Shown here piece after piece: positions 29,652 through 52,339 of a stretch of DNA of 64,000 bases; position 1 is the first letter of the stretch, and each line of letters starts with the position of its first letter. The DNA is from Rebecca billardiae RCC1528 (Eukaryota > Protista > Haptophyta). The stretch covers positions 1,550,001-1,614,000 of the forward strand of contig OZ251238.1 in the NCBI GenBank assembly GCA_965240325.2. Reading direction: 5' to 3'. The position numbers were made by a program, and so were the translations under genes. The notes beneath the pieces were generated by a model. It was not told the origin of the DNA. It did not search any database and saw only the letters and a program-made list of their open reading frames with translations.

Positions 29652-32600
29652 ATGCTGCCCCTCCTCGCGCTCGTCGCGCCCGCGATGCACCCCGGCGCGC
29701 TGCTGGGCGCGCTCAGCCCGAGCACGGTCACAAAGCTCGCGTCTGGCACGTCCCACACCTGCGTCCTGTACGGCACCGGCGCGGCCAAATGGTGCGCCGC
29801 GCGGCGCCGCGCCACGCGCACCTCGCGCGCCGCGCCTCACGCGCCGCCTCGCGCGCGCGCGCGCCGCGGCCGACCCTCGCCGCGCCGCGCAGCTTTGGGC
29901 GCGGCGCGAGCGGACAGCTGGGCTACGACGCCACCGCCGACCTCGGCGACGGGCCGAACGAGCTCGGCCTCGCCCTCCCCTTTGTGAGCCTGCCGGACGG
30001 CGCGGCCGTGACCGACCTGTCGGCGGGCGCCGAGCACTCGTGCGCGGTGCTCTCGGACGCGACGGTCCGATGGTGCGTGGCGCGCGCGCGCGCGGAGCGA
30101 CGGGCGCGGCTGGACGCGCGCGCATGCACCGCGCGTGCGGCACGCGCCGCGTGGCCCGCGCGCTCACTGCGCGCGCGCGCACGCATCCATCGAATCGCGC
30201 GCCGCGGCGTGCCGCCTCCGCACGACGATGCGCCGCGCGCCGGCAGCTGGGGCGCGAACGGCAACGGGCAGCTCGGCACGGGCGACACGACGAGCGCGGG
30301 CGACGGCACCGGCCGCGCGATGGGCAACACGCTCCCCGCCGTCAGCCTCGGCGGCTCGGCCGCGGCGCACGCGGTGCGGTGCGGCGCGCACCACACGTGC
30401 GCGCTGACGACCGTGTCGGGCGTGGTCGGCATCCAGTGCTGGGGGCTCGGGTCGAGCGGGCAGCTCGGCAGCGAGTCCACCGCGGACCAGACCGCCCCCG
30501 GCGCGCAGCTCTCCCTCGGCACCGGCCTCAACGTCTCGTCATTCGACGCGCACCTCGGCTCGCACAGCTGCGCCGTGTTCGAGGGCGGCGCGCTCAAGTG
30601 GTGCGCGCGCTGGCGGCGAGGGCGCGCGTGGGCACGCGCGTGTGCGCGCGCCGTGCGGGGCGCCGGCCGGTGCGTGCCGCGCGGCGCGACCGCCGCTCGC
30701 TCACCGCGCGAGCCGCACCCCGCGCGCGCCACGCCCACGCCCCGCGCGCGCCGCGCGCCCGCCGCCGCTCACGGCCCACGCCCCGCCAGCTGGGGCGACA
30801 ACTTCCAGCGCCAGCTGGGCACCGGCGACAAGACGGACTACGGCGGGAGCGCGGGCTCGATGGGCGACAACCTCCCGTTCGCGCTCACCGCCGGCGTCGC
30901 CGAGGTCGGCGTCGGCGTCGCGCACTCGTGCGCGCGACTCAGCGCGGGCGGGCTCAAGTGCTGGGGCCGCGGCACCGACGGCGCGCTGGGCTCCGGCTCC
31001 GCGGCCAACATTGCGAACCCGTCGGCCGCGCCCACGTTCGCGCTGGGCGCGGGGCTGGGCGTCACCGCGCTCGTGAGCGGCGAGCAGTACAACTGCGCCA
31101 TCCTCAGCAACGCCGCGCTCAAGTGGTGCGCGCGCGCGCAGCACGCGGCGCCGGCTGCGCGGCGCCGCGCCGACGCCCGCTCCGCACCCGCCGCGCCGCG
31201 CGCCGCCGCAGCTGGGGCGCCGCCGACGTGGGGCAGCTGGGCACCGGTGACACCGTCAGCCGCGGCGACAGCTCCAACGAGCTCGGCGACTTCCTCCCGC
31301 CGATCTCCCTCGGCGCCGGCCGCAGCGTGACGCGCGTGAGCGTGGGCGCTGCGCACTCGTGCGCAGCGCTGGACGACGGCGCCATCAAGTGGTGCGCGCG
31401 CCGCCGTACCCGCACCCGCACGCGTGCGCGTGCTGCCCGGCTGCCCTCCCGCACGCCCGCCCTGCTGGGTGTCGCGTGGGCGCCGCGACCCTGCCGTGCG
31501 GGGACGGACCCACCGGGAGCCAGCGCCGCGCCGCGGACGCCGCGCGAGACGCGTCGTCTCACGCGCCGCCGCGCGCGCCGCGCGCTGCTACCCGCAGCTT
31601 TGGTCTGGGCGACGTCGGCCAGCTGGGCACGGGCGACACGGCCAACCGCGGCGATACCGCGGGCTCGATGGGGGATGCGCTGCCCGCGATCGGCCTCCCG
31701 CCGCCGCCACCGCCGAGCCCGCCGCCGAGCCCGCCGCCCAGCCCGCCGCCGCCCGACGTTGCGCCTCGCCCGCCGCCCTCGCCGCCGCCCGCGCCGCCGC
31801 CGAGCCCGCCGCCAAGCCCTCCCCCGAGCCCGCCGCCGAGCTCGCCGCCAAGCCCTCCGCCAAGCCCGCCGCCAAGCACTCCACCGAGCCCACTGCCCTC
31901 GCCACCGCCGAGCCCGCCGCCGAGCTCGCCGCCAAGCCCTCCACCGCGCCCGCCGCCCTCGCCGCCACCGCCGGGCCCACCGCCAAGCCCGCCGCCAAGC
32001 CCTCCCCCGAGCCCGCCGCCCTCGCCGCCGCCGAGCCCGCCGCCAAGCCCGCCGCCGCCCAACGTCGCGCCTCACCCGCCGCCCTCGCCGCCGCCCTCGC
32101 CTCCTCCGCCCAGCCCTCCGCCAAGCCCGCCACCGGGCCCGCCGCCATCACCGCCGCCCTCACCGCCGCCGAGCCCGCCGCCGCCGTCACCGCCTCCAAG
32201 CCCGCCGCCCTCACCGCCACCGAGCCCGCCTCCGAGCCCACCGCCACCGTCACCACCACCAAGCCCACCGCCCTCACCACCGCCCAGCCCTCCGCCAAGC
32301 CCGCCGCCTCCGAACCCGCCGCCCAGCCCGCCGCCCCGCCCGCCGCCCTCGCCGCCGCCCAGCCCGCCGCCACCGAGCCCGCCGCCATCGCCGCCACCAT
32401 CACCGCCGCCATCGCCGCCACCATCACCGCCGCCGAGCCCACCGCCGAGCCCGCCACCCTCGCCGCCGCCAAGCCCGCCGCCACCGAGCCCACCGCCGAG
32501 CCCGCCGCCATCGCCACCGCCGTCGCCACCGCTCAGCCCACCGCCGACACCGCCTCCGTCGCCACCACCGAGCCCTCCGCCGAGCCCGCCGCCGCCATCA

Positions 32601-35600
32601 CCGCCGCCCAGCCCGCCGCCAAGCCCTCCGCCGAGCCCGCCGCCTCCGAGCCTGCCGCGGAGCCCGCCACCATCACCGCCGCCATCACCGCCACCGTCGC
32701 CGCCGCCACCGTCACAGCCGCCTAGCCCACCGCCGAGCCCGCCGCCCTCGCCGCCGCCGAGCCCGCCGCCGCCGAGCCCGCCCCCGAGCCCACCGCCATC
32801 ACCACCGCCGTCGCCAGCGCCCAGCCCACCGCCGTCACCGCCACCGAGCCCGCCGCCTAGCCCTCCGCCGAGCCCGCCGCCACCATCGCCACCGCCAAGC
32901 CCGCCGCCATCGCCACCGCCCAGTCCGCCACCATCCCCACCACCTCCAAGCCCTCCTCCGTCACCTCCGCTGAGCCCACCACCGAGCCCACTGCCGAGTC
33001 CACCGCCTAGCCCGCCGCCCAGCCCGCCTCCCTCCCCACCACCGTCGCCACCGCCACCGTCGCCTCCGCCGTTACCGCCACCATCTCCGCCACCAAGCCC
33101 ACCTCCAAGCCCGCCGCCATCGCCGCCACCCCCAAGTCCACCACCGTCGCCGCCTCCCAGCCCGCCACCGTCGCCACCGCCTAGCCCGCCGCCGAGTCCT
33201 CCACCAAGTTCGCCGCCCTCACCACCGCCCTCGCCGCCGCCGAGCCCACCGCCGTCGCCGCCACCGTCACCGCCGCCATCGCCACCACCCAGCCAGCCGC
33301 CCTCGCCGCCCAGCCCACCGCCGCCGAGCCCGCCGCCAAGCCCGCCGCCATCACCGCCACCGATCCCACCACCATCGCCGCCACCGTCTCCGCCACCGTC
33401 TCCGCCACCGTCACCGCCACCCAGCCCGCCACCAAGCCCGCCGCCCTCGCCTCCTCCGAGCCCACCGCTGAGCCCGCCGCCGTCACCGCCGCCGTCGCCG
33501 CCGCCCAGCCCGCCGCCGAGCCCGCCGCCCAGCCCGCCGCCGAGCCCGCTGCCTGCGCTACCGCCATCGCCACCGCCGTCACCGCCACCGTCGCCGCCGC
33601 CATCTCCGCCGCCGCCGAGCCCGCCGCCGAGCCCCCCACCGAGCCCGCCGCCGTCACCACCGCCGAGCCCACCTCCGAGCCCGCCGCCGTCGCCGCTACC
33701 CCCAAGTCCACCACCGTCGCCGCCTCCCAGCCCGCCACCGTCGCCACCGCCTAGCCCGCCGCCGAGTCCTCCACCAAGTTCGCCGCCCTCACCACCGCCC
33801 TCGCCGCCGCCGAGCCCACCGCCGTCGCCGCCACCGTCACCGCCGCCATCGCCACCACCCAGCCAGCCGCCCTCGCCGCCCAGCCCGCCGCCGCCGAGCC
33901 CGCCGCCGAGCCCGCCGCCATCACCGCCACCGATCCCACCACCATCGCCACCACCGTCTCCACCACCGTCTCCGCCACCGTCACCGCCACCCAGCCCGCC
34001 ACCCAGCCCGCCACCAAGCCCGCCGCCCTCGCCTCCTCCGCCCAGCCCTCCGCCAAGCCCGCCACCGGGCCCGCCGCCGAGCCCGCTTCCATCGCCGCCG
34101 CCCAGCCCGCCGCCGTCCCCGCCACCGTCGCCACCGCCGAGCCCGCCGCCGAGCCCACCGCCCAGCCCGCCGCCGTCGCCGCCGCCGCCCAGCCCGCCGC
34201 CGAGCCCGCCGCCGAGTCCCCCACCGAGCCCGCCGCCGTCACCACCGCCTAGCCCACCTCCGAGCCCGCCGCCGTCGCCGCCACCGTCGCCGCCGCCGAG
34301 CCCGCCGCCTAGCCCACCGCCCAGCCCGCCACCTTTGCCACCGCCGAGCCCGCCACCAAGCCAGCCGCCCCGCCCGCCGCCGTCGCCGCCGCCACCCAGC
34401 CCACCGCCCAGCCCGCCGCCTTCTCCGCCGCCGAGCCCGCCACCGTCACCGCCGCCGAGCCGGCCGCCGAGCCCGCCGCCAAGTCTGCCGCCCTCGCCGC
34501 CGCCGTCGCCGCCACCCAGCCCACCGCCAAGCCCACCGCCATCGCCCCCGCCCAGCCCACCGCCCAGCCCGCCGCCCAGCCCGCCGCCATCGCCGCCACC
34601 GCCCAGCCCACCGCCCAGCCCTCCACCCTCGCCGCCGCCCAATCCGCCACCGAGCCCGCCACCGTCACCGCCGCCCTCTCCGCCGCCGTCACCGCCACCT
34701 TCGCCGCCACCGAGCCCGCCGCCCAGCCCGCCTCCACCGCCGCCGCCTTCACCACCGCCGTCACCGCCACCTTTGCCGCCGCCGAGCCCGCCGCCGAGCC
34801 CGCCACCCAGCCCGCCGCCCTCGCCGCCGCCGAGCCCGCCCCCGAGCCCGCCACCGTCGCCTCCGCCACCGAGCCCTCCGCCGAGCCCACCGCCGAGCCC
34901 GCCGCCGAGCCCGCCGCCGTCTCCACCCCCAAGCCCCCCGCCGTCACCCCCGCCATCGCCACCGCCCAGCCCACCGCCCAGACCGCCGCCCTCGCCGCCG
35001 CCCAGCCCGCCCCCGAGCCCGCCACCGTCACTGCCGCCCTCTCCGCCGCCGTCGCCGCCACCTTCGCCGCCACCGAGCCCGCCGCCCAGCCCGCCGCCGT
35101 CGCCGCCGCCTTCGCCACCGCCGTCCCCGCCACCGTCGCCACCGCCGAGCCCGCCGCCCAGCCCACCGCCCAGCCCGCCGCCGTCGCCGCCGCCGCCCAG
35201 CCCGCCGCCCAGCCCGCCGCCGAGCCCGCCGCCCAGCCCGCCGCCCTCGCCGCCGCCCTCTCCACCGCCGTCACCGCCACCATCGCGACCGCCGAGCCCG
35301 CCGCCGAGCCCGCCGCCGAGCCCACCGCCGTCTCCTCCGCCGAGCCAGCCTCCTTCCCCGCCGCCATCACCGCCGCCGAGCCGGCCGCCGAGCCCGCCGC
35401 CAAGTCCGCCGCCCTCGCCGCCGCCGTCGCCGCCACCCAGCCCGCCGCCAAGCCCACCGCCATCGCCACCGCCCAGCCCACCGCCCAGCCCGCCGCCCAG
35501 CCCGCCGCCATCGCCGCCACCGCCCAGCCCACCGCCCAGCCCTCCACCCTCGCCGCCGCCCAATCCGCCACCGAGCCCGCCACCGTCACCGCCGCCCTCT

Positions 35601-38600
35601 CCGCCGCCGTCGCCACCACCTTCGCCGCCACCGAGCACACCGCCCAGCCCGCCGCCGTCGCCGCCGCCTTCACCACCGCCGTCCCCGCCACCGTCGCGAC
35701 CGCCGAGTCCGCCGCCCAGCCCACCGCCCAGCCCGCCGCCGTCGCCGCCGCCGCCCAGCCCGCCGCCGAGCCCGCCGCCGAGCCCGCCGCCCAGCCCGCC
35801 GCCGTCGCCACCTCCGCCCAGCCCGCCGCCGTCGCCGCCGCCCTCTCCACCGCCGTCACCGCCACCATCGCGACCGCCGAGCCCGCCGCCGAGCCCGCCG
35901 CCGAGCCCGCCGCCGAGCCCACCGCCGTCTCCTCCGCCGAGCCAGCCTCCTTCCCCGCCGCCATCACCGCCGCCGAGCCGGCCGCCGAGCCCGCCGCCAA
36001 GTCCGCCGCCCTCGCCGCCGCCGTCGCCGCCACCCAGCCCGCCGCCAAGCCCACCGCCATCGCCACCGCCCAGCCCACCGCCCAGCCCGCCGCCATCGCC
36101 GCCACCGCCCAGCCCACCGCCCAGCCCTCCACCCTCGCCGCCGCCCAATCCGCCACCGAGCCCGCCACCGTCACCGCCGCCCTCTCCGCCGCCGTCGCCG
36201 CCACCTTCGCCGCCACCGAGCCCACCGCCCAGCCCGCCGCCGTCGCCACCGCCGCCGAGCCCGCCGCCGAGCCCGCCGCCGAGCCCGCCGCCCAGCCCGC
36301 CGCCGTCGCCGCCGCCCTCTCCACCGCCGTCACCGCTACCATCGCGACCGCCGAGCCCGCCGCCGAGCCCGCCGCCGAGCCCACCGCCGTCTCCTCCGCC
36401 GAGCCCGCCTCCTTCCCCGCCGCCGTCCCCGCCGCCCTTCCCGCCGCCGTCGTCGCCGCCGTCGCCACCACCCAGCCCCCCGCCCAACCCGCCGCCGGGC
36501 CCGCCGCCATCGCCGCCGCCATCGCCACCGCCGTCGCTGCCGCCGTCGCCACCTCCACCCAGCCCTCCGCCCAGCCCGCCGCCGTCCCCGCCACCGTCGC
36601 CGCCGCCGTCGCCGCCGCCGAGCCCGCCGCCGAGCCCGCCGCCGTCGCCGCCGCCGCCCAGCCCACCGCCCAGCCCGCCGCCGTCGCCGCCACCTTCGCC
36701 GCCGCCCAGCCCGCCGCCTTCCCCGCCGCCGTCCCCACCGCCGAGCCCGCCACTGTCGCCGCCACCCAGCCCGCCACCCAGCCCACCCCCGAGCCCGCCA
36801 CCTGCGCCGCCGCCCTCACCACCACCGTCGCCGCCGCCCTCGCCACCTCCGCCAAGCCCACCGCCCAGCCCGCCGCCCAGCCCGCCCCCGAGTCCGCCGC
36901 CGAGCCCGCCGCCCAGCCCGCCACCCAGCCCGCCGCCGAGCCCGCCGCCGGCTCCGCCGCCGTTGCTGCCACCGTCTCCGCCGCCCAGCCCGCCGCCCGG
37001 CCCACCGCCCTCGCCGCCGCCGTCACCACCGCCCTCACCCCCGCCGTCGCCACCACCCTCGCCGCCGCCGCCGAGCCCGCCGCCAAGCCCACCGCCGAGC
37101 CCGCCGCCAAGCCCGCCACCGTCGCCACCGCCGAGCCCGCCGCCGTCGCCGCCGCCGTCCCCGCCGCCGCCGAGCCCGCCACCGAGCCCGCCGCCGAGTC
37201 CGCCGCCATCGCCGCCGCCGCCCAGTCCGCCGCCCAGCCCGCCGCCCAGCCCACCGCCGCCGCCGCCGCCGCCGAGCCCGCCGCCGAGCCCGCCGCCGTC
37301 GCCGCCGCCGTCCCCGCCGCCGCCGTCCCCGCCGCCGTCCCCGCCGCCATCGCCACCGCCGTCGCCACCGCCGAGCCCGCCGCCGTTGCCGCCGCCGCCG
37401 CCGCGCGTGCTGCCGTTCCCGCCGCCCTCGCCTCCCGCGCCGCCGCCCTCGCCGCCGCCTTCGCCGCCGCCGGCGCTTCCGCCGTCGCCGCCGCCGAGCC
37501 CGCCGCCGAGCCCGCCGCCCGCGCCGCCGCCGTCCCCGCCGCCGAGCCCGCCGCCGAGCCCGCCGCCGAGCCCGCCGCCGAGCCCGCCGCCGCCGAGCCC
37601 GCCGCCGAGCCCGCCGCCGAGCCCGCCGCCCAGCCCGCCGCCGCCCTCGCCGCCGCCAAGCCCGCCGCCGTCGCCGCCGCCGTCGCCACCGCCGCCCAGC
37701 CCACCGCCCTCGCCGCCGCCGAGCCCGCCGCCGTCGCCGCCGCCGCCGAGCCCGCCGCCGAGCCCGCCGCCGAGCCCGCCACCGGCCCCACCGCCGCCCT
37801 TCCCGCCGCCGTCGCCGCCGCCGAGCCTGCCGCCGTCGCCGCCGCCGTCGCCACCGCCATTGCCGCCTCCGCCGCCGCGCACCGAGCCGTTCCCGCCGCC
37901 CTCGCCGCCCTCGCCGCCGCCGAGCCCGCCGCCGAGCCCGCCGCCTTCGCCGCCGCCGAGCCCGCCGCCCTCGCCGCCGCCGAGCCCGCCGCCCACGCCA
38001 CCGCCCTCGCCGCCGCCCTCGCCGCCGCCGAGCCCGCCGCCGAGCCCGCCGCCCTCGCCGCCGCCGAGCCCACCGCCGAGCCCGCCGCCGAGCCCGCCGC
38101 CCTCGCCGCCGCCGAGCGCGCCACCGAGCCCGCCGCCCTCGCCGCCGCCGAGCGCGCCACCGAGCCCGCCGCCCTCGCCGCCGCCGAGCCCGCCGCCAGT
38201 GCCGCCGCCCAGCGCGCCGCCTGCGCCGCCGCCCTCGCCGCCGCCACGCCCGCCGCCAGCGCCGAGCCCGCCGCCGCGCGCGCCGCCCTCGCCGCCCTCG
38301 CCGCCGCCCTCGCCGCCGCCCTCGCCGCCGCCGAGCCCGCCGCGCCCGCCCTCGCCGCCGCCCTCGCCGCCGGGCTCGACCGAGTACGTGCGCGTGTACG
38401 CCGCGGGCGCCGTCTCCGACTTTGCCGGCGCGGACGAGGCCGCGAGGCTCGAGGCCGCCTTCCGCAACGCGACGGGCGTGGACGGCGCGGCGGACGTGGC
38501 GCTGGTGAGCGTGGCCGCTGCGTCGGTCGCGCTCGTGTTCCGCGTGTTCACGCCGGCGGCGGCGCGGTACGTGGACGCGGACGCGGCGCTGCGCGCGCTG

Positions 38601-41600
38601 AGCCGCGCGCAGCTCGCCGCGCGCCTCGGCCTCGCGCTGCCGCAGCCGGGCGGCGGCGGCGGCGGCGGCGGCGGCGCGCCGAACGCGGTGGTGGAGCGCG
38701 CGTGGCCCGGCTGCACCGACTCGGCCGCGGCCAACTTCGACAGCAGCGCGGACGTGCAGCTGGGCGCGGGCGCGTGCGCGTACGCGCCGCCCGCCCCGGC
38801 GGCGCCGGGCTCGCCGCCGCCGCGCGCGCCGCCGCCGCGCCCCGGCTTTGGCGCGCCGCTGCGCGCCGTCGCGGGCGGCGGCGCCGTGCGGATCGCGACG
38901 CCGCCGCACCCGAGCGGGCTGCCGGCCGGCTCGGCGGTCAAGTGGGCGCGCGCGCCGGACGAGGCGGCGGCGGCGTTCGACGAGGGCGCGGGCGGCTGGG
39001 CGGGCGTGGTGGACTGCGCGCCGCCCGCGCACGCCGGCCTCGGCGGCGCCGACGGCGTGCCGCTCCCGCCCGACGGCGCGCTGCGCTGGGCCTTTGCCGA
39101 GGCGGGCGCGTACGCGCTCTGCGCGCGCGCGCCTGCGGGGCCGGAGGCGGCGCGCTGGGCGGTGGCGCCGGGGTTCGAGCTGAGCGTGGCGGCCGTGTTC
39201 GGGCTGGTGGGACCGTCGCACGTGGTGGCGGGCGCGCAGGCGAGCGTCACCCTCGCGGGCGAGCGCCTCGCCGCGGGCGACCTCGTCGCGTGGGCGGCCG
39301 CGGGCGCGGCGGGCTGCGCGGACGCCGCGGCCGCAGCGCCGCTGCTCGGCGGCGGCCGCGCCGCCGCGAGCGCGCCGTTCGCGATCGCGAGGGCGCAGCT
39401 GGGGCTGGCGCTGTGCTACACGCCCGCGCGCGGCGTCGCGCCCGCGCTGCTGCGCAACGTCACGCTCGACGCCGTGCGCGTCGACGGCCCCGCGCTCGCG
39501 CTCGGCGCGGCGGGCGGCGGCGCGGCGCGCGTGCGGTTTGCGGGCGTCGGGCTGGGCGCGCCGGGCGACGGTGCGCTGTGGGCGCGGCCCGAGCCGTCGG
39601 CGGCGGCGGCGTGCGCGGCGGCGGACGCGGCGCGCGCCACGCCCGTCGGGCCCGACGGCGGCGCGGCCTTCGCCTTCGACGCCCCCGCGCCCGACCTGCG
39701 CCTGTGCTACGCGCACCGCGGCGGGCCGCTCACCGCGTACGCGCACGTGCGCGCGCGCGCCGCCGCGGTGCTCGGCCCGGAGGCGGCGCTCGGCGTGGCG
39801 GGCGCGGCGCGCTCGCTGCCGCTCGAGGGCGTGGGGCTGGCGGACGGCGACGCCGCGCGCTGGATCGACGCGTCCGACGGCGACGACGCCGCCGCCGCCG
39901 CCGCGTGCACGCGCGCCGCGCTCGACGCGGACGCGCCCGCCGCGGGCGCGGAGGGCGGCGCGCGCTGGTACGGCACCCCGATGGCGCTCGCGGGCGGCGC
40001 GCTCGCCTTCACGCCCGCGGCGCCCGCCGCGCGGCTGCGGCTGTGCTACGCCTTTGGCGGCGGCGTCGACGCCGACGCCGCCGCGTCGGCGTCGGGGCCG
40101 CCGCCGGTGCTCGCCGCCGCCAACGTGAGCCTGACGGTGGTCTCGCTCGACGGCGCCGAGCTCGGCGCGCCCGGCGGCGGCGCGCCGGTCGCGGCGCTCG
40201 GCGCGGCGGGCGGCTCGCTGGGCGTGCGGCCGCTCGGCGCGGGCGTGGGCGCGGGCGACGAGGCGTACCTCGCGCCGCCCGGCACGCGCGCCGCGGCGTG
40301 CGACGGCGCCGCCGCGCTCGGCGTGCGCGGCGGCGTGGCGCGCGTCGGCGCCGACGGCGTCGTCGCCTTTGCGCTCGCGCCCGGCGGCGGCGGCGTCAAC
40401 CTGACGCTGTGCTACCGCTTCCGGCCGGGGCACGGCGGCGGCGGCGGCGGCGCGGCGTGGGCGGTGGCGCCGCACCCGGCGGGGCGCGTCGACGTGCTCG
40501 AGCTCACGCGGCCGCGCCTCGCCGTCGCGGTGGTGGGCGCGCCGCGCGCGGTGCGCTTCGAGGGGCACGGCGTCGCGCCGGGCGACCGCGCCGCGTGGGT
40601 GTCCGAGCCGGCGGCGTGCGACGCGAGCGCCGGGCCCGCCCCGGCCGCCGTGGGGCCGGCGACGCTCGACGGCGCGCTCCGCGCGGCGTTCGGCGCCGCG
40701 GGCGCGCGCGCCGCGGGGCTCGTGCTGTGCTACCGCTGGGCCGCGCTCGGCGCGTGGTCGCTCGCGCCGGCCGCGCGCCTCGCGGTCGTCGGCTCGGCCG
40801 ACCCGCTCGCGGGCGCGCGCGTGGACGCGGTCGTGCCGCGCGGCGCGGCGATCGGCGCGGGCGCGGCGGCGCGCACGCGCGTGCGCGTGCTCGGCGCCGG
40901 CTTCGACCCGGCCGTCGCGCTGCTCGCGTACTGCGAGTTTGGCGCCGTGCGCGTGCCCGCGGCCGCGGTCTCGGAGGGGGCGGTCGAGTGCGACGCGCCC
41001 GCCGCCGCGCTCGGCGCGGCGGGCGGCGAGCGCGCGCTCTCGGTGCGCGTGGGCGTGGGCGCGGCCGGCGAGGAGGCGGGCGGCGACGGCGGCGGCGTGA
41101 GCTCGGGGCTGCTCGTGGCGGACGGCGCCGGCGACGCGCCCTTTGTGCTCTACAACGCGTCGCGCGTGCGCGTGACGAGCGTGTGGCCGCCGGGCGCGCC
41201 GCTCGGCGCGGCGGCGGGCGTGGCGCTGCGCGTGGGCCTCGCCGAGCTGCTCGAGCTGGGCGCGCCCGCGCTCGGGTTCGGGCCGCCGCTGCACGGCGGC
41301 GCCGAGGGCGGCGTGGCGCTCGTCGGCGCGAGCGCGCCCGACGCGCTGCGCGCGGAGCTGCGCGGCGCCGCGCCGTACGCGCCCGCGTCCGCGCTCGGCG
41401 GCGCGCTCGGCGCGGTGCTCGCGCCCGTCTCCGCCTCGCTCGACGGCGCGACGTTTGGCGGCGGCGGCTCGTTCGGCGTGTACGCGGCGCTGCTGCACGG
41501 CGTGCGCCCGGCCGGCGCGCCCGCGCGCGCGCCGGGCGCGGTGCGCGTGCTCGGCGCGGGGCTGGTCGAGCTCGCGCCGGGCGCGGCGCTCTGCGTGTTC

Positions 41601-44600
41601 CGCCCGCTCGCGCCCGCCGCCGCCGCCGCGGGCTACGCCTTCCGCACGCCCGCCGCCCTCGAGCGCGGCGGCGGCGGCGCGTCGTGCGGCACGCCCGGCG
41701 CCGCGCCGCCCGGCGCGTACGAGATTGCAATCTCGCTCAACGGCGGCGCGCACGAGGTGGGCTCGCTCTTCGAGCCGCCGACGCTCGAGCTGTACGACGC
41801 GGCGCGCGTGGCGGTGCGCGCGCTGCAGCCGCCGGGCGGGCCCGTGCACGGCGGCACCGACGTGACGCTGCTCGGGTCGGGGTTCGCCGAGTACGGCGCG
41901 GGGCTGCTGTGCTGCGTGCTGCTCGGCGGCGACGACGACGCGGCGCGCGCCGGCTGCGCCGCGCCCGCGCGGCTGCTCGCGCCCGACCCGGCGGCGCCGG
42001 CGGAGAGCCGCGCGGCGTGCGTGCTGCCCGCCGCGCGCGCGGGCGCGCGCTCGCTCGAGCTCTCGCTCGGCAACGGCACGGTGGGCTCCACCTCCGCCTC
42101 AGGCGCACTCTTCACGCACTACGCGCCACCCACGCTGCTGGGCGCGGCGCCGGCGCCCGCCGACTCGCTCGGCGGCGCGCTGGTGACGCTGCGCGGCGCG
42201 GGGTTCGGCGCGCTGGGCGACGGCGGCGCGCACGCGCGCGTGGCGTTCGGGCCGGTGCTCACGGCCGAGCCGCCGCTGCTCGCCACCGACCGCACGCTCG
42301 TCGTGCGCGCGCCGTGGGGCGACGCAGGGCACACGCGCGTGCGCGTGTCGCTCAACGGGCAGCAGCTCCACCCGGCGCCGGCGGACGAGGGCGCGCCGTT
42401 CGGGTTTGTCGGGCTGCACCGCCCCGAGCTGCTCGGCGCGGCCTTCTCGGCGGACGGCTCGAGCCTCGAGCTGCGCTTCGACGCGCAGCCCACCGACGAG
42501 GGCGGCGCGGTCGGCGCCGTGCCGTGCGCGGCGCTGCTCGACGACGAGACGAGCGCGGCGCTCGGCGGCGGCGGCGGCGAGGGCGGCGGCGAGGGCGGCT
42601 CGTCGCCGGCGCCGCGGTGCCACTGGTCCACGCCGAGCACGCTCGTGGCACAGCTGGGCGCGGGCACGAGCCTGCGCCCGGGCTCGCGCGTGGCGCTGCG
42701 GCCGCACGCCATCGCGCCCGCGTTCCTCGCCGCGGCGTGCCCGCACCCGCTCTGCGCCAACGGCTCGGCGACCATCCCGCTCGACGCGCCGTGCGCGCCG
42801 CACGCGTGCCCCGCGCCGGTCGCGGCGCTCGCCGGCCCCGCGGCGCTCTCGGTGTGCCCGGACGAGCCGATCGTGCTCGACGCGTCCGGCTCGGGCGGCG
42901 GCGGCATCGCGCCGCTCGTGTTCGAGTGGGCCGCCGACCCGTCGCGCTCCGACCGCGCCGACGCGCTCAACGCGCACCTGCGCGCGCTGCCGCCGTCGAC
43001 GGCGGCGCTGACGGTGCCCGCCGCGCTGATCGGCGGCGAGCGGTACGCGTTCGTCGTGCGCGTCTCGTCCGCGCTGACGGGCGCGGCGTCGGCGCCGGCC
43101 GAGTGGGCGGTGGCGCGCACGGGCGAGGCCGACCCCGCGCTCGCGTTCGACGGCCCGCACGCGCTGCGCGTCCGCCCCGCGTCCGAGCTGTTCGCGCGCG
43201 GCGCCGTGCGGCTCGCCGCGTGCTGGCCGCCGGACGCGCCCTCGTCGCGCGTCGACTTCGAGTGGAGCGTGGCGGGCGTGGCGGAGGCGGGCACGGGGCT
43301 GCGCGCGGACGACGAGGCGGCGGAGGCCGCGCGCGTCAGCGCCCTCCTGCGCGCGGCCGCGACGGACGCGTCCGCGCTGCTGCCGCCCTTCTCGCTGCGC
43401 GCGCGCACCGCGTACACGCTGCGCCTGCGCGCGTGGATGGCGGCGGCGCCGGTCGCGGCCGCGGCCGCGTCGCTCGCCGTGACGGTCGAGCCCGAGGCGC
43501 TGCGCGCGGTGCTCGACGTCGCGAGCCTCACCGCGTCGGCGGGCGGCGCGTGGGCGCTCGACGGCTCCGCCTCGTTCGACCCCAACGTGCCCCTCGCGCT
43601 CGGCGCGGCCGGGCTGCAGTACGCGTGGGAGCTGCAGCGGCGGCGGGCGGCGGGCGGCGGCGGCGCCAACGGCACGGCGGCGCACGCCGGCGGGCAGCTC
43701 GAGGCGGTGGCGCTGCCCGCGGGCGTGGACGGCGCGTCGGCGGTGCTGGCCGTGCCCGCGGGCGCGCTGCCCGCGGGCGAGTACGTCGCCACGCTGCGGC
43801 TGGCCAAGCCGGGCGTGGGCGGCGCGAGCGCGGCCGCCGCCGTGCAGCTCGTGGGCGCGGCGCTGCCGACGATCCGCTTCGAGCCGCGGCGCGCGCGCAA
43901 GCACAGCGCGGCGTGGGCGCTGCCGACCGAGCGGCTGGTGGTGCGCGCCGCGCTGGACGACGCCTCGCTCGCGCGCGAGGCGTCGGGCGGCGCCGCGTGG
44001 GCGTACGCGTGGACGCTCGTGCCGCTCGGCGCGGACGGCGCGCGCGCGGCCGGCGCCGCGCCGATCCCGCTCGGCGGCGCGGCCGGCGCGCGCCTCACCG
44101 CCGCGGGCGGCGCCGCGCCGAGCGTCGCGTTCGTCTCGGGCGCGCTCGCGCCGGGCGGGTCGTACGCGCTGCAGCTGGCCGTGACCGACGCGCTGCTCGG
44201 CGGCGGCGGCGTGCCCGCGCTCGGCTCGACCACGCTCTCGCTCAACCGGCCGCCGCACGGCGGCTGGCTCGAGGCGGCGCCCGCGCGCGGCGACGCGGTG
44301 GCGACGCGCTTTGCGCTGCGCGCGCGCGGCTGGGCGGACGAGGCGGACGACCTGCCGCTGCGCTACGCGTTCTCGTACGCGCCCGCCTCGCCGCCCGCGC
44401 CCGGCGGCGCCGAGCCGGGCGGCACGCCGCTCGGCGAGCGCACGCTCTCGAGCGCCGCCGCCGCCGTGCTGCCGCCGGGCGCGTGGGCGGTCGGCGTGGC
44501 CGTCACCGACGCGCTCGGCGCGGCCGCGCGCGCGAGCGCGGGCGTGGAGGCGCGCGCGCCGGCGGAGGGCGCGCTGCCGTGCGCCGTGCTGCGCGGCGCG

Positions 44601-45544
44601 CTCGCCGACGCCGAGGCCGCCGTCGAGCGCGCGGACGCGGACGGCGCGCGCCAGCTGCTCGGCGCGCTCGCGGCCGCGGCCGCGGGCGGCGGAGCCGGCG
44701 GCGGAGCCGGCGGCGCGTGCAACGCGAGCGCGGCCGAGCCGCCGCCGCCGTCCGAGGCGGCGGTGGTGGCGCAGATGCTCGCGCTCGCGCGGCGCGCGGC
44801 GAACCGCACGCTCTCCACGCCCACCTCGCGGCTGCACGCCGCGAGCGTGCTGCGCGCCGTGCTCGGCGCCGCGGCGCGCGTCGGCGCCGCGGCGCGCGCG
44901 GACGCGCTCGAGCAGGTGGGTGCGATCGCACGGGCGGCGGCGGCGGACGGGCTGGACGGCGCGACGGCGTCGGCGCTGGTCGGCGCGCTGGACGGCGCGC
45001 TCGGCGGCGAGGCCGCCGCCGCCGACGAGCCCGCCGCCGTCGAGGCGGCGCAGCGCGCCGCGCGCGCGTCCGCGCTCGCGCTCGGCGCGGCGCTCGCCGC
45101 CGGCCGCGCGCCGGGCGAGCCGCGCGCCGAGGCGGTGGGCGCGCGCGTCGCGATCTCGGCGCAGCGGCTGGCGCCGGCGGCGCTCGGCGGCGGCGTGGCG
45201 CTCGGCGGCGCGGGCGGCGCGTTCGAGCTCGCGCTGCCCCCCTCCGCGCTCGGCGCCGGCGCGGCCGGCGGCGTCGACGTGCTCGGCGTGGCGTTTGCGC
45301 GCGGCGCGGGCGCGCACCCGCCGCCCGGCGCGGGCGCGCGCGCGCTCGCGAGCGCCGTTGTGGGCGTGACGCTCGGCTCGGCGGCGGACGGCTCGCCGAT
45401 CGAGGTGCGCGGCCTCGAGCCGCCGCTCGTGCTCACCATCCCGCTCCCGCCCGCCGCGCCGCCGCCGCCGGACGGCGAGTCCGTCGCCTGCCACTGGTGG
45501 GACGAGGCGGCCGGCGCGTGGAGCGCCGCCGGCTGCGAGACGGT

Positions 45545-45577
<33 letters not shown>

Positions 45578-48035
45578 GCTGGTGTGCGCGTGCTCGCACC
45601 TCACCGACTTTGCGGGCGTCTCCGTGCCCACGTCGTCCGACGAGCTCGCGGCGGACGCCGCGTCCTTCTCGGTGAACACGCTGCAGGCCGACGACTTCGC
45701 CGCGCTCTCCGACGTCGACCTCTCCGAGAACCCGTACGTGTACGGCCTCGTGCTCGGCATGGCGGCCGCCAACGCGCTCTGCCTCGCGCTCTTCGCGGCG
45801 CGCGACGCGGCCGAGGCGCGCGCGCGCACGCGGCGCCGGCTGGGCGCGAGGCTGGGCACGGCGCTGCGCGCGGACGGCGAGCGCGCCGAGCTGCTCGCGC
45901 GCAAGCTCGAGACCGGGCTCGACGACCTCGACGACTACCTCGCCGAGCGCGCCAACCACGCGGCCGCGCTCATCCAGCGGATCGCGCGCGGCCGCTCGGC
46001 GCGCGCGCTCGCCGCGGACGAGGCGGCGGCCGCCGCCGCGGCGGCCGCGCCGGCGGACGGCGCGCCCGCCGCCGCCGCGGCGGCGCGGCGGCGCTGGCGC
46101 GGGGCGGACCGCGCGTCGGAGCACGGCCTCACGCGCCTCTTCCGCGCCATCGCCGCGCGGCTGCGCACCGAGCACACGCTGCTCGCGCTGTGGTTTGGCG
46201 ACGCGGAGGAGCTGTCGCGCGCCGAGCTGTGCCAGCTCTTCTGGTCGCTCATGTTCCTCGGCCTCGTGCTCTCGTGCATGCTCTTCGCGGCGGAGCCGCC
46301 GCCCGACTCCGCGCCGTCGAGCGTCAGCCTGACGCACGCGCTGCTCACCGCGCTCGTCACCGCCGGCCTCGCCATCCCCGGGCTCGCGCTGCTCCGGCTG
46401 GCGTTCCGGCTCGGGTACGCGCGCATGTCGGGCCCGCTCTCGCGCCGCGTGTTTGCGCACCTGCGCGAGGACGCGCGCGAGGCGCGGCAGCGCTCCGTGT
46501 TCCACACGTCGGTGCGCTCGGTGCTGCAGGCGACGCCGCGCGAGCAGCTCGCCGCGCTCTCGCGCGCCACCTCGCGCGCCAGCGTCGGCGGCGGCGGCTC
46601 CGCGCGCGCCTCGTCGTTTGCCGGCCGCGCCGCCTGGGCCAAGGCGCGCTCGGCGGACGCGCTCGCGCGGCCGCACCGCGGCGCGGCCGGCCGCGCGGCC
46701 GCCGCCGCCGCCGACCGCGTGACGCCCGAGCCCACGCGCGCCGCCGCCGCCGTCGCGCCCGTCGAGCCCGAGGGCGGCTCGCCGCGCGCGCCCGCCGCGC
46801 TCGCGCCCGCGCTCGGCGGCGACGGCTCGGAAGAGGACCGCTCGACGGCCGGCCGCGCGCGCCGGCCCACCGTCGACGAGAGCGGCGCGGCCGTCACGCT
46901 GCCGCCCGTGCCCGGCCAGCCGCCGCGCGTGCTCTCGCAGCGCACGCTGCGCACCGGCCGCTCGCGCTCCGCCGAGCTCGGCGCGCCGCCGCCCACGAGC
47001 GTCGCGGCCGCCGCCGCCGCGGCCGCCGCCGCGTACGCCGCCGCGGAGGGCGGCGAGCGCGCGGCGGCGGCGGAGGAGGCGTCGACGCCGCAGGCGCGCC
47101 GCTCGCGCGTCTCGCCCGACGAGCTGCTGCGCCGCGCCGCGCACGCCGCCGCCTCGCCGCCCGGCGCCGCGCCGCCGCCGCCGCCGCCGCCCGGCCCGCC
47201 GCCGCCGCCGCCGCCGGGCGCGGCGGCACCGCCCTCGCTCGCGCTCGCGGCGGTCGCGGCGGCGCGGCGCGCCGAGTCGCGCGGTGGCGCCGCCGCCGAC
47301 GACGACGACGACGAGGGGAGCCCGCCGCCGATGCTCGGCGCCGCGCGCCCCGGCGGCAGCGTCGTCTCGTTCGTGCGCGACGACGAGCTGCTCACCGACG
47401 GCGGCGCGGTGCTGCGGCACGCGCTCGACGGCCCGACGCTCGCGCTGCTCAAGAGGAAGTTCCGGCTGTACGACGTGGACGACTCGGGCGGCGTGGACGG
47501 CGCCGAGTTTGGCGCGCTGCTCTACGACCTCGGCTTCCGGCTGCGCCGCCGCACCGTGCGCGCGCTCGCCACCGAGCTCGACACGGACGCGAACGGCGTG
47601 ATCGGCTTCACGGAGCTCGTCGCGTGGTACTCCGACATGGTCACCTCCGAGGCGGCCAAGGAGGCGCGGCGCAGCGAGGGGCTGGGCGGCCGGCTGCGCG
47701 CGCTCGCGGCGCGCGCCGCGCCGCCCGCGCGCGTGCGCATCGGCCTCGCGTGGGCCTTCGTCTGGGGCCTCACCGTCGGGATGGCGCTGCTCGCGGTCGT
47801 GTACGCGCGCGCGCTCGGCGCGGCCGCGACGCGCGCGATGATCGGCTCGTGGGGCGTGGCGGAGGTGCAGACGCTCGGCGTGGAGGAGCCGCTCCTGATC
47901 GCGGTCGGCGTCGCGCTGCCCATCATCGCCGAGTGGATGAGCCGCGGCTCGCTCGGCGAGCTCGCCGCCGAGCTCGCCGCCACCACCGTCGGCGTGTGCA
48001 TCCACGGCCTCAAGACGGCGACCGGCATCTGCTAG
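29652..48035 (+). CDS. Giant polycystin-1/REJ-like surface receptor (~5875 aa); exons 29652-29791, 29893-30072, 30247-30600, 30790-31125, 31212-31391, 31598-48035
   Basis: In order: signal peptide MLPLLALVAPA; RCC1/BLIP-II repeats (HSC..KCWG...GQLG); Ser-Pro3 stalk; SEA-like segment; Ig-like repeats; IPT/TIG (PPGGPVHGGTDVTLLGSGF); REJ (VLDASGS, LDGSASFDP, NRPPHGG, GWADEADDLPLRYAF); GPS (CHWWD..WSAAGC..CACSHLTDFA); TM1; IQ; PKD1-like TM2-3 (EHTLLALW..LSRAE); EF-hand pair; further TM helices ending GVEEPL. Exon lengths sum to 17628 nt, in frame. Confidence 0.85.
31698..38372 (+). repeat. Coding (Ser-Pro3/4)n extensin/pherophorin-like repeat, ~2225 codons
   Basis: 12-nt unit such as agcccgccgccg or tcgccgccgccc, with synonymous variation and no stops or frameshifts over 6.7 kb. 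Confidence 0.95.
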
Positions 48036-52150: not shown

Positions 52151-52339
52151 GAGCGGCCGTCCCTTGCCGTGGCGCGTGGTTGTCGGGACGTCTGTCGGGC
52201 GTGTCCACACGCGTTATCCCGCCCGAGCGCGCCGGTTCGCAGCGCGGCGCGCGCCCACGGTCGGCTAGCCGGCTGCGGTGGCGGGCGCGCGTACGCTGCG
52301 GTTCGCGTGAGCCAGCTGACGGCGATGCGGAATAAGCTG

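What the first reader, a model, noticed from the sequence alone, without database searches (positions are those of the whole stretch)
29652..48035. ~5875-aa polycystin-1-like receptor with an RCC1 propeller on a giant extensin stalk, and IQ/EF-hands in place of PLAT and channel domains
Seen: signal peptide, RCC1 repeats, SP3 stalk, Ig-like/IPT, REJ, GPS with an intact HL|T site (45597-45605), TM1, IQ (AAALIQRIARGRSAR, ~45960), TM2-3, a long cytosolic loop with two EF-hands (DVDDSGGVDGAE, DTDANGVIGFTE, ~47470-47620), more TM helices, then stop. Established: PKD1 proteins have REJ-GPS-TM1-PLAT followed by 11 TMs in total, including a channel-like domain. No PLAT or channel part is recognisable here. 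Inference: an autoproteolysed, Ca2+/calmodulin-regulated adhesion or mechanosensory receptor that holds a ligand-binding propeller far from the membrane, possibly linked to the haptonema, flagella or scales.
Basis: partly seen in the sequence, partly recalled or inferred. Interest (0 to 1): 0.75.

Follow-up and report, generated by a model that had tools for sequence, protein, structure and literature searches.

The report
Giant stalked channel-less polycystin-1-like receptor
A very GC-rich haptophyte alga has an intact six-exon gene for a 5,875-residue surface protein: a propeller head on a proline rod about 0.7 micrometres long, anchored by the self-cleaving, five-helix front half of a polycystin-1-type receptor with its own calcium sensor. 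It is one of roughly 100 such genes in a family that no paper I could find describes.

Summary
A six-exon model (29652-48035, +) gives 5,875 codons and one stop. Confirmed parts:
- RCC1 repeats, above Pfam threshold exon by exon
- a 2,231-residue Ser-Pro3 stalk
- IPT/TIG, REJ (3e-23) and GPS, with HL|T exactly at 45597-45605
- five hydrophobic helices and a canonical EF-hand pair

The IQ motif fits the textbook pattern but is below the Pfam threshold. PLAT, PKD_channel and Ion_trans are absent from the whole window. Satellite DNA follows the stop codon.

New here:
- **GAIN fold.** The region before the GPS folds as a true GAIN domain (Z 20-21 to adhesion-GPCR GAINs).
- **Membrane core.** The best structural match of the five-helix core, out of 48,161 chains, is polycystin-1 TM1-TM5 (Z 12.6-13.3). 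The protein therefore looks like the front half of polycystin-1 without the channel half. Sequence profiles did not confirm this link.
- **Not unique.** The genome holds at least 93 REJ loci; 70 carry the same C-terminal EF-hand/TM4-TM5 module. At least 22 loci have an RCC1 head upstream. Relatives exist, unnamed, in Diacronema lutheri, Pavlovales CCMP2436 and Chrysochromulina-type sequences.

This scan already met the same family in other windows of this genome. Function as an autoproteolytic, Ca2+-modulated adhesion or mechano-receptor is inference only.

The parts
29652..29791 (+). Exon 1: start codon, short hydrophobic signal-peptide-like N-terminus (MLPLLALVAPA...), then the closing strands of the RCC1 propeller
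   Evidence: frame and splice sites. RCC1_2, 15 bits, below threshold. The signal peptide is judged by eye only.
29893..31391 (+). Exons 2-5 (29893-30072, 30247-30600, 30790-31125, 31212-31391), encoding RCC1 repeats. Introns at 29792-29892, 30073-30246, 30601-30789, 31126-31211 and 31392-31597, all GT..AG, phase 2, at K|C-W/F-G
   Evidence: PF00415 is above threshold in each of exons 2-5. Paralogue matches to exon 3 cover exactly residues 1-117, which supports the exon boundaries.
31598..48035 (+). Exon 6, 16,438 nt: last RCC1 repeat, stalk, ectodomain, membrane core and stop codon (48033-48035)
31695..38387 (+). Ser-Pro3 (extensin/HRGP-like) stalk: 2,231 aa, 449 SPPP units. About 0.7 micrometres long if it forms a polyproline-II helix at 0.31 nm per residue
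   Evidence: GC skew of -0.4 to -0.5 over the region. The length estimate is inference from the known PPII geometry.
38388..40800 (+). Unassigned post-stalk domain, then six units of about 100-110 aa (38853-40784) that share G.GL..GD...W...C...L.LCY. No Pfam match
40801..43244 (+). IPT/TIG-like repeats. One is above the Pfam threshold at 42150-42374, one is weak near 41820, and the rest are by eye only
43245..44660 (+). REJ domain
   Evidence: PF02010, E 3e-23, 82.6 bits, profile positions 12-450 of 452
44661..45614 (+). GAIN domain (helical subdomain A plus beta-sandwich subdomain B), ending in the GPS motif (45486-45614). The predicted cleavage site HL|T is at 45597-45605
   Evidence: AlphaFold pLDDT about 85-95. 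Foldseek: latrophilin GAIN 4dlq, 4.3e-8. VIA-align: Z 21.4, 20.7 and 19.8 to the Gpr126, GPR110 and BAI3 GAIN domains. Pfam GPS. Motif position. The strand after the cleavage site is low-confidence in the model.
45603..45743 (+). Post-cleavage 'stalk' (TDFAGVSVPTSS...), a candidate tethered peptide, conserved across paralogues and distant relatives
   Evidence: T invariant; F and P at least 90% conserved
45744..45800 (+). TM1
   Evidence: Hydropathy 2.04; confident helix in both models
45957..46004 (+). IQ-like motif (ALIQRIARGRSAR) in cytosolic loop 1, at the position where polycystin-1 has PLAT
   Evidence: The pattern is conserved in 16 of 20 paralogues. Pfam IQ scores only 13.3 bits against a cut-off of 20.3.
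46236..46394 (+). TM2 (46236-46292) and TM3 (46338-46394), preceded by the conserved DH.LT...H(S/T)LLG..F.D.E..RAEL.Q.FW block
46470..47381 (+). Disordered, low-complexity cytosolic loop (poly-Ala, poly-Pro and acidic runs)
   Evidence: No Pfam hit. pLDDT below 50. Its length varies among paralogues.
47448..47633 (+). EF-hand pair resembling one calmodulin lobe, with two canonical Ca2+ loops
   Evidence: EF-hand_7, 5.1e-11. The family profile hits calmodulin at 1e-27. Loop sequences. Structural matches to centrin, troponin C and calmodulin, Z 10-12.
47745..48032 (+). TM4 (47745-47801), TM5 (47874-47930) and a short conserved helical tail. This is the true C-terminus
   Evidence: All paralogues end within a few residues of the same aligned position. 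A Chrysochromulina-type relative matches at its own extreme C-terminus.

Best explanation
This is a real, intact gene for a type-I-start, five-pass surface protein. It is one member of a large haptophyte family of 'receptors on a pole'.

Shown by tools:
- a seven-repeat RCC1 head
- a 2,231-residue Ser-Pro3 rod
- repeat and IPT domains, then REJ
- a true GAIN fold with an intact HL|T GPS motif
- a five-helix membrane core whose best structural match is polycystin-1 TM1-TM5
- an IQ-like motif where polycystin-1 has PLAT
- a calmodulin-lobe-like EF-hand pair in the TM3-TM4 loop
- no channel half

Inferred mechanism:
1. The GAIN domain cuts itself at HL|T. The roughly 5,300-residue outer fragment stays non-covalently attached to the membrane fragment.
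2. The rod, probably glycosylated, holds the propeller head hundreds of nanometres from the membrane, where it binds a ligand or surface.
3. Pull or shear on the head strains or removes the outer fragment and exposes the conserved TDFAGVSVP peptide. That peptide changes the state of the five-helix core, as proposed for adhesion GPCRs and polycystin-1.
4. The cytosolic EF-hand pair, perhaps clamping the IQ helix of the same chain, makes the output Ca2+-dependent.
5. Ion flux, if any, would come from separate PKD2-like channels, of which the genome has about 30 loci.
For: - **Gene model and domains:**
- **GAIN fold:** (Z 20-21).
- **Core resembles polycystin-1 TM1-TM5.** It is the only membrane protein among the top 50 rows.
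- **Topology is self-consistent.** It places the GAIN domain outside and the IQ motif and EF-hands inside, with positive charges on the cytosolic side.
- **Selection on the module.** 70 of 93 REJ loci have the EF-hand/TM4-TM5 module 3.2-6.5 kb downstream. All 20 fetched paralogues keep CxCxHLT[DE]F. The post-cleavage peptide, the block before TM2, the EF loops and the C-terminus are conserved.
- **IQ and EF-hands co-vary.** The four paralogues that lack IQ also have degenerate EF loops.
- **One transcript.** An MMETSP transcript-derived protein (P0010) carries REJ, GPS and EF-hands in a single chain.
- **Head and base belong together.** RCC1 heads recur 11-26 kb upstream of REJ or C-terminal modules on the same strand at 22 loci.
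- **Tethered-peptide model for PC1 and adhesion GPCRs:** PMC9672506.
- **Precedent for a long Hyp-rich polyproline rod tied to a polycystin-type anchor:** Chlamydomonas MST3/PKD2/SIP (PMC11015965).
Against: - No transcript, proteomic or localisation data exist for this gene.
- A GPS consensus does not guarantee cleavage, and the strand after the cleavage site is low-confidence in the model.
- A Z of 12.6-13.3 is borderline for a helical bundle by the tool's own note.
- The family profile found no polycystin-1 chain in the PDB by sequence at E up to 10.
- In polycystin-1 the stalk peptide is proposed to act on the TOP domain of the channel half (PMC9672506), and that half is missing here.
- The IQ motif is below the Pfam threshold.
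- One paralogue (L017) keeps IQ with degenerate EF loops.
- Proline hydroxylation and glycosylation of the rod are assumed.
- No output pathway is identified.
Confidence: 0.6

Rival explanations
1. It is a structural surface fibre rather than a receptor. The family would make membrane-anchored hairs or a glycoprotein coat on the cell body or flagellum. The five helices would only anchor the fibre, the GAIN domain would act as a break-away joint that sheds it, and no signal would be passed.
For: - The rod makes up 38% of the protein.
- About 100 paralogues with swapped heads fit a coat or hair repertoire.
- Chlamydomonas mastigonemes are Hyp-rich polyproline filaments anchored in the ciliary membrane (PMC11015965).
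- No G-protein, kinase or channel module is present.
Against: - A mere anchor would not need five conserved helices, a conserved post-cleavage peptide, canonical Ca2+ loops and an IQ-like helix kept across dozens of paralogues and into Chrysochromulina-type relatives.
- Even the mastigoneme anchor is part of a channel complex.
Confidence: 0.2
2. It is a recognition receptor for gametes, self/non-self, or prey, bacteria and viruses, like sea-urchin REJ proteins and the Ectocarpus male-gamete REJ protein. The large family with shuffled heads would supply recognition specificity, and the base would trigger a Ca2+ response on contact.
For: - REJ-GPS proteins act in sperm-egg recognition in sea urchins (PMC1934368).
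- A REJ-GPS multi-pass protein is male-gamete-specific and positively selected in Ectocarpus (PMC4700764).
- Head diversity across paralogues in this genome.
Against: - No expression or life-cycle data are available.
- RCC1 heads at 22 or more loci are 51-69% identical over the exon tested, which is not obviously hypervariable.
- This differs from the best explanation in what is sensed rather than in how.
Confidence: 0.12
3. The gene model is an artefact. In DNA of 80-87% GC long open frames arise by chance, so the 16.4-kb exon could merge two or more genes or read through hidden introns, or the locus could be a dead copy.
For: Other frames and the opposite strand are open for 2,000-3,100 aa over the same DNA. 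There are no RNA data for this genome in the tools.
Against: - All Pfam domains lie in one frame in the expected order.
- The part after the stalk has no start codon or signal peptide of its own.
- The conserved blocks lie in a single open frame in each of the 20 paralogues fetched (one, L018, loses the terminal module), although the loops between them vary in length.
- The same head-to-base order and spacing recur at 22 loci.
- A Pavlovales transcript carries REJ through to the EF-hands in one chain.
- Catalytic and Ca2+-binding motifs are intact.
Confidence: 0.05

Closest known systems
Polycystin-1 / PKD1 family (human PKD1, PKD1L1-3, PKDREJ; sea-urchin SpREJ1-10)
   Same: REJ domain, then GAIN/GPS with HL|T, then TM1. 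It has a large modular ectodomain with Ig-like/IPT-type repeats. The five-helix core matches PC1 residues 3063-3610 (TM1-TM5) best in the PDB. It has a conserved post-cleavage peptide. Some sea-urchin members also lack PLAT and have only 1, 2 or 6 TM helices (PMC1934368).
   Different: There is no PLAT after TM1; a helical loop with an IQ-like motif sits there instead. TM6-TM11, the TOP domain and PKD_channel are absent. An EF-hand pair is built into the TM3-TM4 loop. The head is an RCC1 propeller and the stalk is 2,231 residues of Ser-Pro3. No sequence-level match of the membrane core to PC1 was found.
Adhesion GPCRs (latrophilin, BAI, GPR126, GPR110, CELSR, CD97)
   Same: GAIN domain fold (Z 14-21) and GPS motif (profile hits at 3.8e-7). 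The same logic of a large adhesive outer fragment on an autoproteolytic joint with a tethered peptide.
   Different: There are five helices rather than a 7TM secretin-like bundle, and no 7tm_2 hit. REJ lies upstream of GAIN, which is a PKD1 trait.
Chlamydomonas mastigoneme core protein MST3 with PKD2 and SIP (PMC11015965)
   Same: An algal surface protein in which folded N-terminal domains sit on a polyproline-II rod hundreds of nanometres long, rich in Ser and (hydroxy)Pro, joined to a polycystin-type membrane domain. The authors propose it acts analogously to PKD1.
   Different: The MST3 anchor is a PKD2-like channel-half domain completed by SIP. Here the anchor is the other, non-channel half (REJ-GAIN-5TM) with EF-hands. 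The lineage differs (green alga against haptophyte). No partner proteins are known here.
Unnamed haptophyte homologues: Diacronema lutheri KAG8462819.1 and KAG8461221.1 ('hypothetical protein' / 'EF-hand domain-containing protein'), Pavlovales sp. CCMP2436 KAJ1633484.1 ('REJ domain-containing protein'), and a cluster containing a Chrysochromulina parva protein
   Same: The same base of TIG-REJ-GPS-TM1..TM3-EF-hands-TM4-TM5. Profile hits reach 2.9e-98, and Pfam gives the same domain set.
   Different: The annotated models are much shorter, about 2,000-2,150 aa. None of the six annotated models whose whole length was scanned has an RCC1 head or a giant stalk. They are 27-36% identical to this protein over the shared base. 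None is described in a paper I could find.
Ectocarpus Esi0130_0068 (PMC4700764)
   Same: A non-animal REJ + GPS multi-pass membrane protein.
   Different: It has 1,427 aa and 6-7 predicted TM helices, with no stalk, RCC1 or EF-hands reported. It is male-gamete-specific. It was not compared by sequence here.

Membership tests
PKD1 / polycystin-1 (REJ) family | REJ domain | tested here: met
   PF02010, E 3e-23, 82.6 bits against a cut-off of 25, nearly full length
PKD1 / polycystin-1 (REJ) family | GAIN domain with GPS motif (HL|T/S) directly before TM1 | tested here: met
   Pfam GPS, 25.7-26.7 bits against 22.5. HLT at 45597-45605. GAIN fold with Z 20-21. Actual cleavage cannot be tested here.
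PKD1 / polycystin-1 (REJ) family | PLAT/LH2 domain in the first cytosolic loop | tested here: not met
   No PF01477 hit in the protein at E up to 1. The genome has only two PLAT loci, neither in the window nor close to a listed REJ locus (compared). Half of the sea-urchin members also lack it (PMC1934368).
PKD1 / polycystin-1 (REJ) family | Eleven TM helices, the last six forming a TRPP/PKD2-like channel-type domain with TOP | tested here: not met
   Five helices, then the stop. No PKD_channel or Ion_trans hit anywhere in the window. Paralogues end at the same position. Satellite repeats lie downstream.
PKD1 / polycystin-1 (REJ) family | TM1-TM5 bundle like that of polycystin-1 | tested here: inconclusive
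   8z6b_A is rank 1 of 48,161 chains: Z 12.6 (13.3 in the other model), 194 residues, rmsd 5.1 A, PC1 3063-3610. That Z is borderline for helical bundles, and no sequence-profile hit was found.
Adhesion GPCR (class B2) | GAIN domain followed by a secretin-like 7TM bundle | tested here: not met
   GAIN is present, but there are only five helices, no 7tm_2 Pfam hit, and no GPCR 7TM bundle among the top structural matches of the membrane-fragment model.
RCC1-like seven-bladed propeller | Seven tandem RCC1 repeats | tested here: met
   PF00415 above threshold in exons 2-5, with partial matches in exons 1 and 6. Seven GQLG-type motifs appear in the spliced reading. The propeller fold itself was not predicted, because the joined sequence was not submitted to any tool.
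Extensin / hydroxyproline-rich glycoprotein | Ser-(Pro)3-5 repeats that are hydroxylated and O-glycosylated; plant extensins also have Tyr cross-link motifs | tested here: inconclusive
   449 SPPP units. Tyr is not among the eight commonest residues of the stalk and no Tyr cross-link motif is visible in its translation, so it is not a classical plant extensin. Hydroxylation and glycosylation cannot be tested with these tools.
EF-hand (calmodulin-like lobe) | Paired helix-loop-helix with canonical 12-residue Ca2+ loops | tested here: met
   EF-hand_7, 5.1e-11. Profile against calmodulin, 1e-27. Both loops have D at positions 1 and 3, G at 6 and E at 12; position 5 is S in the first loop and N in the second.
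IQ calmodulin-binding motif | [FILV]Qxxx[RK]Gxxx[RK] on an amphipathic helix, above the Pfam PF00612 threshold | tested here: inconclusive
   The pattern is met and is conserved in 16 of 20 paralogues. Pfam gives 13.3 bits against a cut-off of 20.3. Binding is untested.

The most novel reading that the evidence does not exclude
Haptophytes keep the two halves of polycystin-1 as separate genes. This family would be the free-standing REJ-GAIN-5TM receptor half, so animal 11-TM polycystin-1 would be a fusion of such a receptor with a TRPP channel subunit. The roughly 100 members, each with a different head on a rod 0.3 to several micrometres long, would form the cell's fine surface or flagellar hairs. 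They would work as mechanical or contact antennae that gate separate PKD2-like channels, and a built-in calmodulin lobe that clamps the IQ helix of the same chain would close a Ca2+ feedback loop.
Probability: 0.2. Interest if true: 0.8.

Novelty: new variant of a known kind. Interest (0 to 1): 0.62.

Why it matters
- **A minimal polycystin-1 base.** Polycystin-1 is a major human disease protein, and the role of its first five helices and how its GAIN-tethered peptide signals are still debated. Here the REJ-GAIN-5TM part stands alone, is repeated about 100 times and carries its own Ca2+ sensor. That offers a simple system to ask what this half does without the channel half, and it bears on how the 11-TM protein arose.
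- **Algal cell surfaces.** The family is a large, unannotated part of the surface proteome of pavlovophytes and probably other haptophytes. Public gene models of the relatives are about 2,000 aa and appear to miss heads and stalks. The family may explain surface hairs, adhesion, or recognition of prey, bacteria or mates.
- **Annotation.** Giant low-complexity exons in very GC-rich genomes are likely to be systematically mis-annotated.

Tried and rejected
- **Own-genome search with the whole 811-aa C-terminal piece** failed twice. A 218-aa piece worked.
- **Family profile A1 against PDB sequences.** It hit only the GPS motifs of adhesion GPCRs and no polycystin-1 chain at E up to 10. The link between the membrane core and polycystin-1 therefore rests on predicted structure alone. 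My recollection that the block before TM2 resembles the polycystin-1 sequence before its TM2 stays an untested lead.
- **ESM Atlas** gave no usable hit.
- **Pfam IQ** is below threshold.
- **Pfam** found nothing in 38403-40199, 44661-45464 or 46470-47381.
- **Literature searches.** 'REJ domain' + haptophyte gave 0 papers. 'GAIN domain' + Emiliania huxleyi gave 0. The listed hits for 'polycystin' + haptophyte were protist-taxonomy and plankton-ecology papers, none on this family. The D. lutheri genome paper mentions neither REJ, PKD nor RCC1.
- **Search for a REJ-plus-channel fusion elsewhere in the genome.** The one PKD_channel hit inside a giant frame (C16, 6,448 aa) is an Ala/Gly-rich protein with no stalk or REJ character. 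I rejected it as a complete polycystin-1.
- **A hidden downstream channel exon** is rejected.
- **One alignment call** failed internally and was repeated with fewer sequences.
- **Spliced protein.** It was joined only inside a script, to check frame and length. The head was searched exon by exon, so the propeller fold itself was not predicted.

Full report
**1. Setting**

The window is extremely GC-rich: 68-88% in 2-kb steps and 80-87% across the feature. There is a strong C-over-G skew from 32 to 38 kb. At this composition stop codons are rare. Off-frame and antisense ORFs of 2,000-3,100 aa cover the same DNA, so ORF length alone is no evidence of a gene. My own hits agree: the closest public relatives come from Diacronema lutheri, Pavlovales sp. 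CCMP2436 and an MMETSP transcriptome.

**2. Gene model**

RCC1-type motifs (GQLGTGD) appear in shifting frames between 29.6 and 31.7 kb. Five intervals begin with GTGCG and end with CAG. Each lies between ...AA(A/G)TG and C-T(G/T)(G/T)-GG, that is, inside K|C-W/F-G. Removing them gives six exons: 29652-29791, 29893-30072, 30247-30600, 30790-31125, 31212-31391 and 31598-48035. The CDS is 17,628 nt, or 5,875 codons with one terminal stop.

I joined the exons only in that script, to check frame and length. PF00415 (RCC1) is above its gathering score in exons 2, 3, 4 and 5, with partial matches in exons 1 and 6. Seven repeats can be counted, and exon 1 supplies the closing strands. Paralogue matches to exon 3 cover exactly residues 1-117 at 17 or more loci, which supports the splice boundaries.

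**3. Ectodomain**

- **Stalk.** It spans 31695-38387: 2,231 residues, 73% Pro, 22% Ser, 449 SPPP units. As a polyproline-II helix (0.31 nm per residue, textbook value) it would be about 0.7 micrometres long. This is inference.
- **Unassigned region.** An unassigned domain and six units of about 100-110 aa follow (38853-40784). The units share a G.GL..GD...W...C...L.LCY pattern and have no Pfam match.
- **IPT/TIG-like repeats.** One is above threshold at 42150-42374.
- **REJ.** It lies at 43245-44660 (3e-23, profile 12-450 of 452).

**4. GAIN/GPS**

Pfam GPS is above threshold.

An AlphaFold model of window:44661-48032 was built with 49 aligned family members (A3). It gives pLDDT 85-95 for a helical subdomain followed by a beta-sandwich. 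Foldseek ranks the GAIN domains of latrophilin, Gpr126, BAI3, BAI2, GPR110 and CELSR1 first (4.3e-8 and weaker). VIA-align gives Z 21.4, 20.7 and 19.8 for Gpr126, GPR110 and BAI3. The GAIN assignment is therefore solid. The strand after the cleavage site is low-confidence in the model, and cleavage itself cannot be shown here.

**5. Membrane part**

Hydropathy gives five peaks, and both models show them as confident helices. With GAIN outside, the topology puts the loops as follows:

| Loop | Content | Side |
|---|---|---|
| TM1-TM2 | IQ-like motif | cytosolic |
| TM2-TM3 | short acidic loop | outside |
| TM3-TM4 | about 450 aa, disordered, then the EF-hand pair | cytosolic |
| after TM5 | about 35-aa tail | cytosolic |

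Basic residues flank the cytosolic ends.

The EF-hand pair is unambiguous. EF-hand_7 scores 5.1e-11, the family profile hits calmodulin at 1e-27, and both loops are canonical. The IQ motif fits the textbook pattern and is kept in 16 of 20 paralogues. It scores only 13.3 bits in Pfam against a cut-off of 20.3, so I treat it as probable rather than shown.

PLAT and PKD_channel do not hit the protein. Six-frame searches of the whole genome place no PLAT, PKD_channel or Ion_trans match in the window.

**6. Is the C-terminus real?**

The last 218 residues have 131 matches in the genome. In an alignment of 20 fetched paralogues, 19 end within a few residues of the same position; L018 is the exception, its C-terminal module lying in another frame. 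A Chrysochromulina-type relative aligns to TM4-TM5 and the tail at its own extreme C-terminus (hhalign probability 89%, E 2.3e-6). Downstream of the stop the GC content falls, and the DNA consists of satellite arrays with periods of 195-212 bp.

**7. Relation of the core to polycystin-1**

By sequence, the family profile (GPS to TM3) finds only the GPS motifs of adhesion GPCRs in the PDB. It finds no polycystin-1 chain at E up to 10.

By predicted structure the picture differs. It scores Z 13.3 at rmsd 5.1 A, with 194 residues aligned between model 337-1082 and PC1 3063-3610.

A second, independent model covers the membrane fragment alone (window:45603-48032, alignment A4, mean pLDDT 68.9). 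There the same chain is rank 1 of 48,161, with Z 12.6 over the same PC1 range, and every other row is an EF-hand protein.

From my own knowledge of the protein, PC1 3063-3610 is the stretch from just after the GPS through TM5. The tool warns that Z below about 13 can be a generic helical-bundle match, so this is borderline. Even so, the hit is to the family already indicated by REJ and GPS, and to the region next to its GPS. I read the core as the counterpart of polycystin-1 TM1-TM5, with moderate confidence.

**8. It is a family, not a singleton**

- PF02010 matches at least 93 loci in the 72-Mb genome, mostly inside giant open frames.
- Seventy of them have the EF-hand/TM4-TM5 module 3.2-6.5 kb downstream on the same strand.
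- All 20 paralogues fetched have CxCxHLT[DE]F and run 857-1,375 aa from the GPS to a stop.
- RCC1-head exons 51-69% identical to this one occur at 19 or more further loci.
- Of 28 RCC1 loci, 22 lie 11-26 kb upstream of a REJ or C-terminal module. In this gene the C-terminal module lies 17.1 kb downstream of the RCC1 exon tested, which is typical.

The genome also has about 30 PKD_channel loci in ordinary-sized frames. It has only two PLAT loci, neither close to a listed REJ locus.

Outside this genome, an exhaustive HMMER search with the GPS-to-TM3 profile finds 180 proteins at E 1e-10 or better. The best are D. lutheri 'hypothetical' proteins and a Pavlovales CCMP2436 'REJ domain-containing protein', whose cluster representative is an MMETSP transcript product. 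They carry TIG/REJ/GPS/EF-hand hits. More distant relatives are metagenomic proteins of 1,000-1,700 aa with a GPS and sometimes EF-hands or IQ, and one cluster holds a Chrysochromulina parva protein. None of the 12 proteins scanned has PLAT or PKD_channel.

After I had reached this picture, the scan's own notes showed that other windows of the same genome had yielded the same base under other heads (FG-GAP, LRR, TMEM132-like, multiple RCC1), together with the same 'about 100 genes' estimate. I treat those notes as agreeing leads rather than as evidence.

**9. How it probably works**

Shown: the parts list and topology above.

Inferred:
- The GAIN domain self-cleaves at HL|T, leaving a giant outer fragment held non-covalently.
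- The rod holds the propeller far from the membrane.
- Load on the head strains or removes the outer fragment and exposes the conserved TDFAGVSVP peptide (T invariant; F and P at least 90% conserved across 49 sequences).
- The peptide then acts on the five-helix core. This follows the tethered-agonist model reviewed for adhesion GPCRs and polycystin-1 (PMC9672506).

One caveat applies. In polycystin-1 the peptide is proposed to act through the TOP domain of the channel half, which is absent here.

The calmodulin-lobe-like EF-hand pair and the IQ-like helix lie on the same face of the membrane. The four paralogues that lack IQ also have degenerate EF loops, although L017 is an exception. An intramolecular Ca2+ switch is my preferred reading, but it is weakly supported.

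A useful precedent is Chlamydomonas MST3. It is a hydroxyproline-rich polyproline rod hundreds of nanometres long whose polycystin-type membrane domain joins PKD2 and SIP, and its authors propose that it acts like PKD1 (PMC11015965).

**10. Comparison and novelty**

The protein meets the REJ and GAIN/GPS criteria of the PKD1 family and fails the PLAT and 11-TM/channel criteria. Sea-urchin SpREJ proteins show that the family already tolerates 0, 1, 2, 6 or 11 TM helices, and five of the ten lack PLAT (PMC1934368). A REJ-GPS multi-pass protein is also known from Ectocarpus (PMC4700764). 'REJ-GPS without a channel' is therefore not new in itself.

What is new as a variant:
- a conserved free-standing five-helix core with a built-in EF-hand pair and an IQ-like motif
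- the giant Ser-Pro rod
- the RCC1 head
- the scale of the expansion

Relatives are deposited but unnamed. I found no paper describing them in a library that lacks most subscription journals. I class this as a new variant of a known kind.

**11. Verdict**

Interest is 0.62. The gene is a solid, representative member of a remarkable but already repeatedly sighted family. Its wider value lies in what the family could reveal about the non-channel half of polycystin-1.

Noticed in passing
window 48901-49399, 52339-53453, 55179-56486: Satellite-like tandem arrays with periods of 204, 212 (or 420) and 195 bp, 2.5-6.6 copies, 79-93% matching. They lie directly downstream of the gene in DNA of lower GC content (70-73%).
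   Followed up: partly
L015, L016, L019, L020 (G000:C17:296300-301700, C37:589400-594700, C13:2713800-2719200, C31:1023500-1029300): A sub-clade of paralogues has lost the IQ-like motif, and its EF-hand loops are degenerate (Gly instead of Glu at loop position 12; Leu at position 6). This hints that the two elements work together. L017 keeps IQ but has degenerate EF loops.
   Followed up: partly
G000:C16:880623-899966 (-), loci L021 and L022: A 6,448-aa open frame, rich in Ala and Gly, carries a PKD_channel/Ion_trans-type match at its C-terminal end. It has no Pro stalk and no REJ character. It may be a different giant channel protein.
   Followed up: partly
whole genome G000: There are about 30 PKD_channel (TRPP-like) loci but only two PLAT loci. 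No locus was seen that combines REJ with PLAT or with a channel domain, so a canonical 11-TM polycystin-1 seems to be absent from this alga. The searches give lower bounds.
   Followed up: partly
L018 (G000:C3:2668300-2672900): In this paralogue the C-terminal EF-hand/TM module is split over two frames (C3:2671855-2672163 and 2672211-2672447). The single-frame reading ends early, which suggests an intron or a frameshift.
   Followed up: no
window 6001-10000 and 20001-22000: Further stretches of 84-88% GC lie upstream of the gene. They might hold other large low-complexity coding regions. I did not examine them.
   Followed up: no
window 32072-39250 (-), 42099-48218 (-), 38702-48058 (+, other frame): Antisense and off-frame ORFs of 2,000-3,100 aa overlap the gene. 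They translate to Arg/Ala/Gly-rich low-complexity sequence and are best read as by-products of the extreme GC content rather than as genes.
   Followed up: partly
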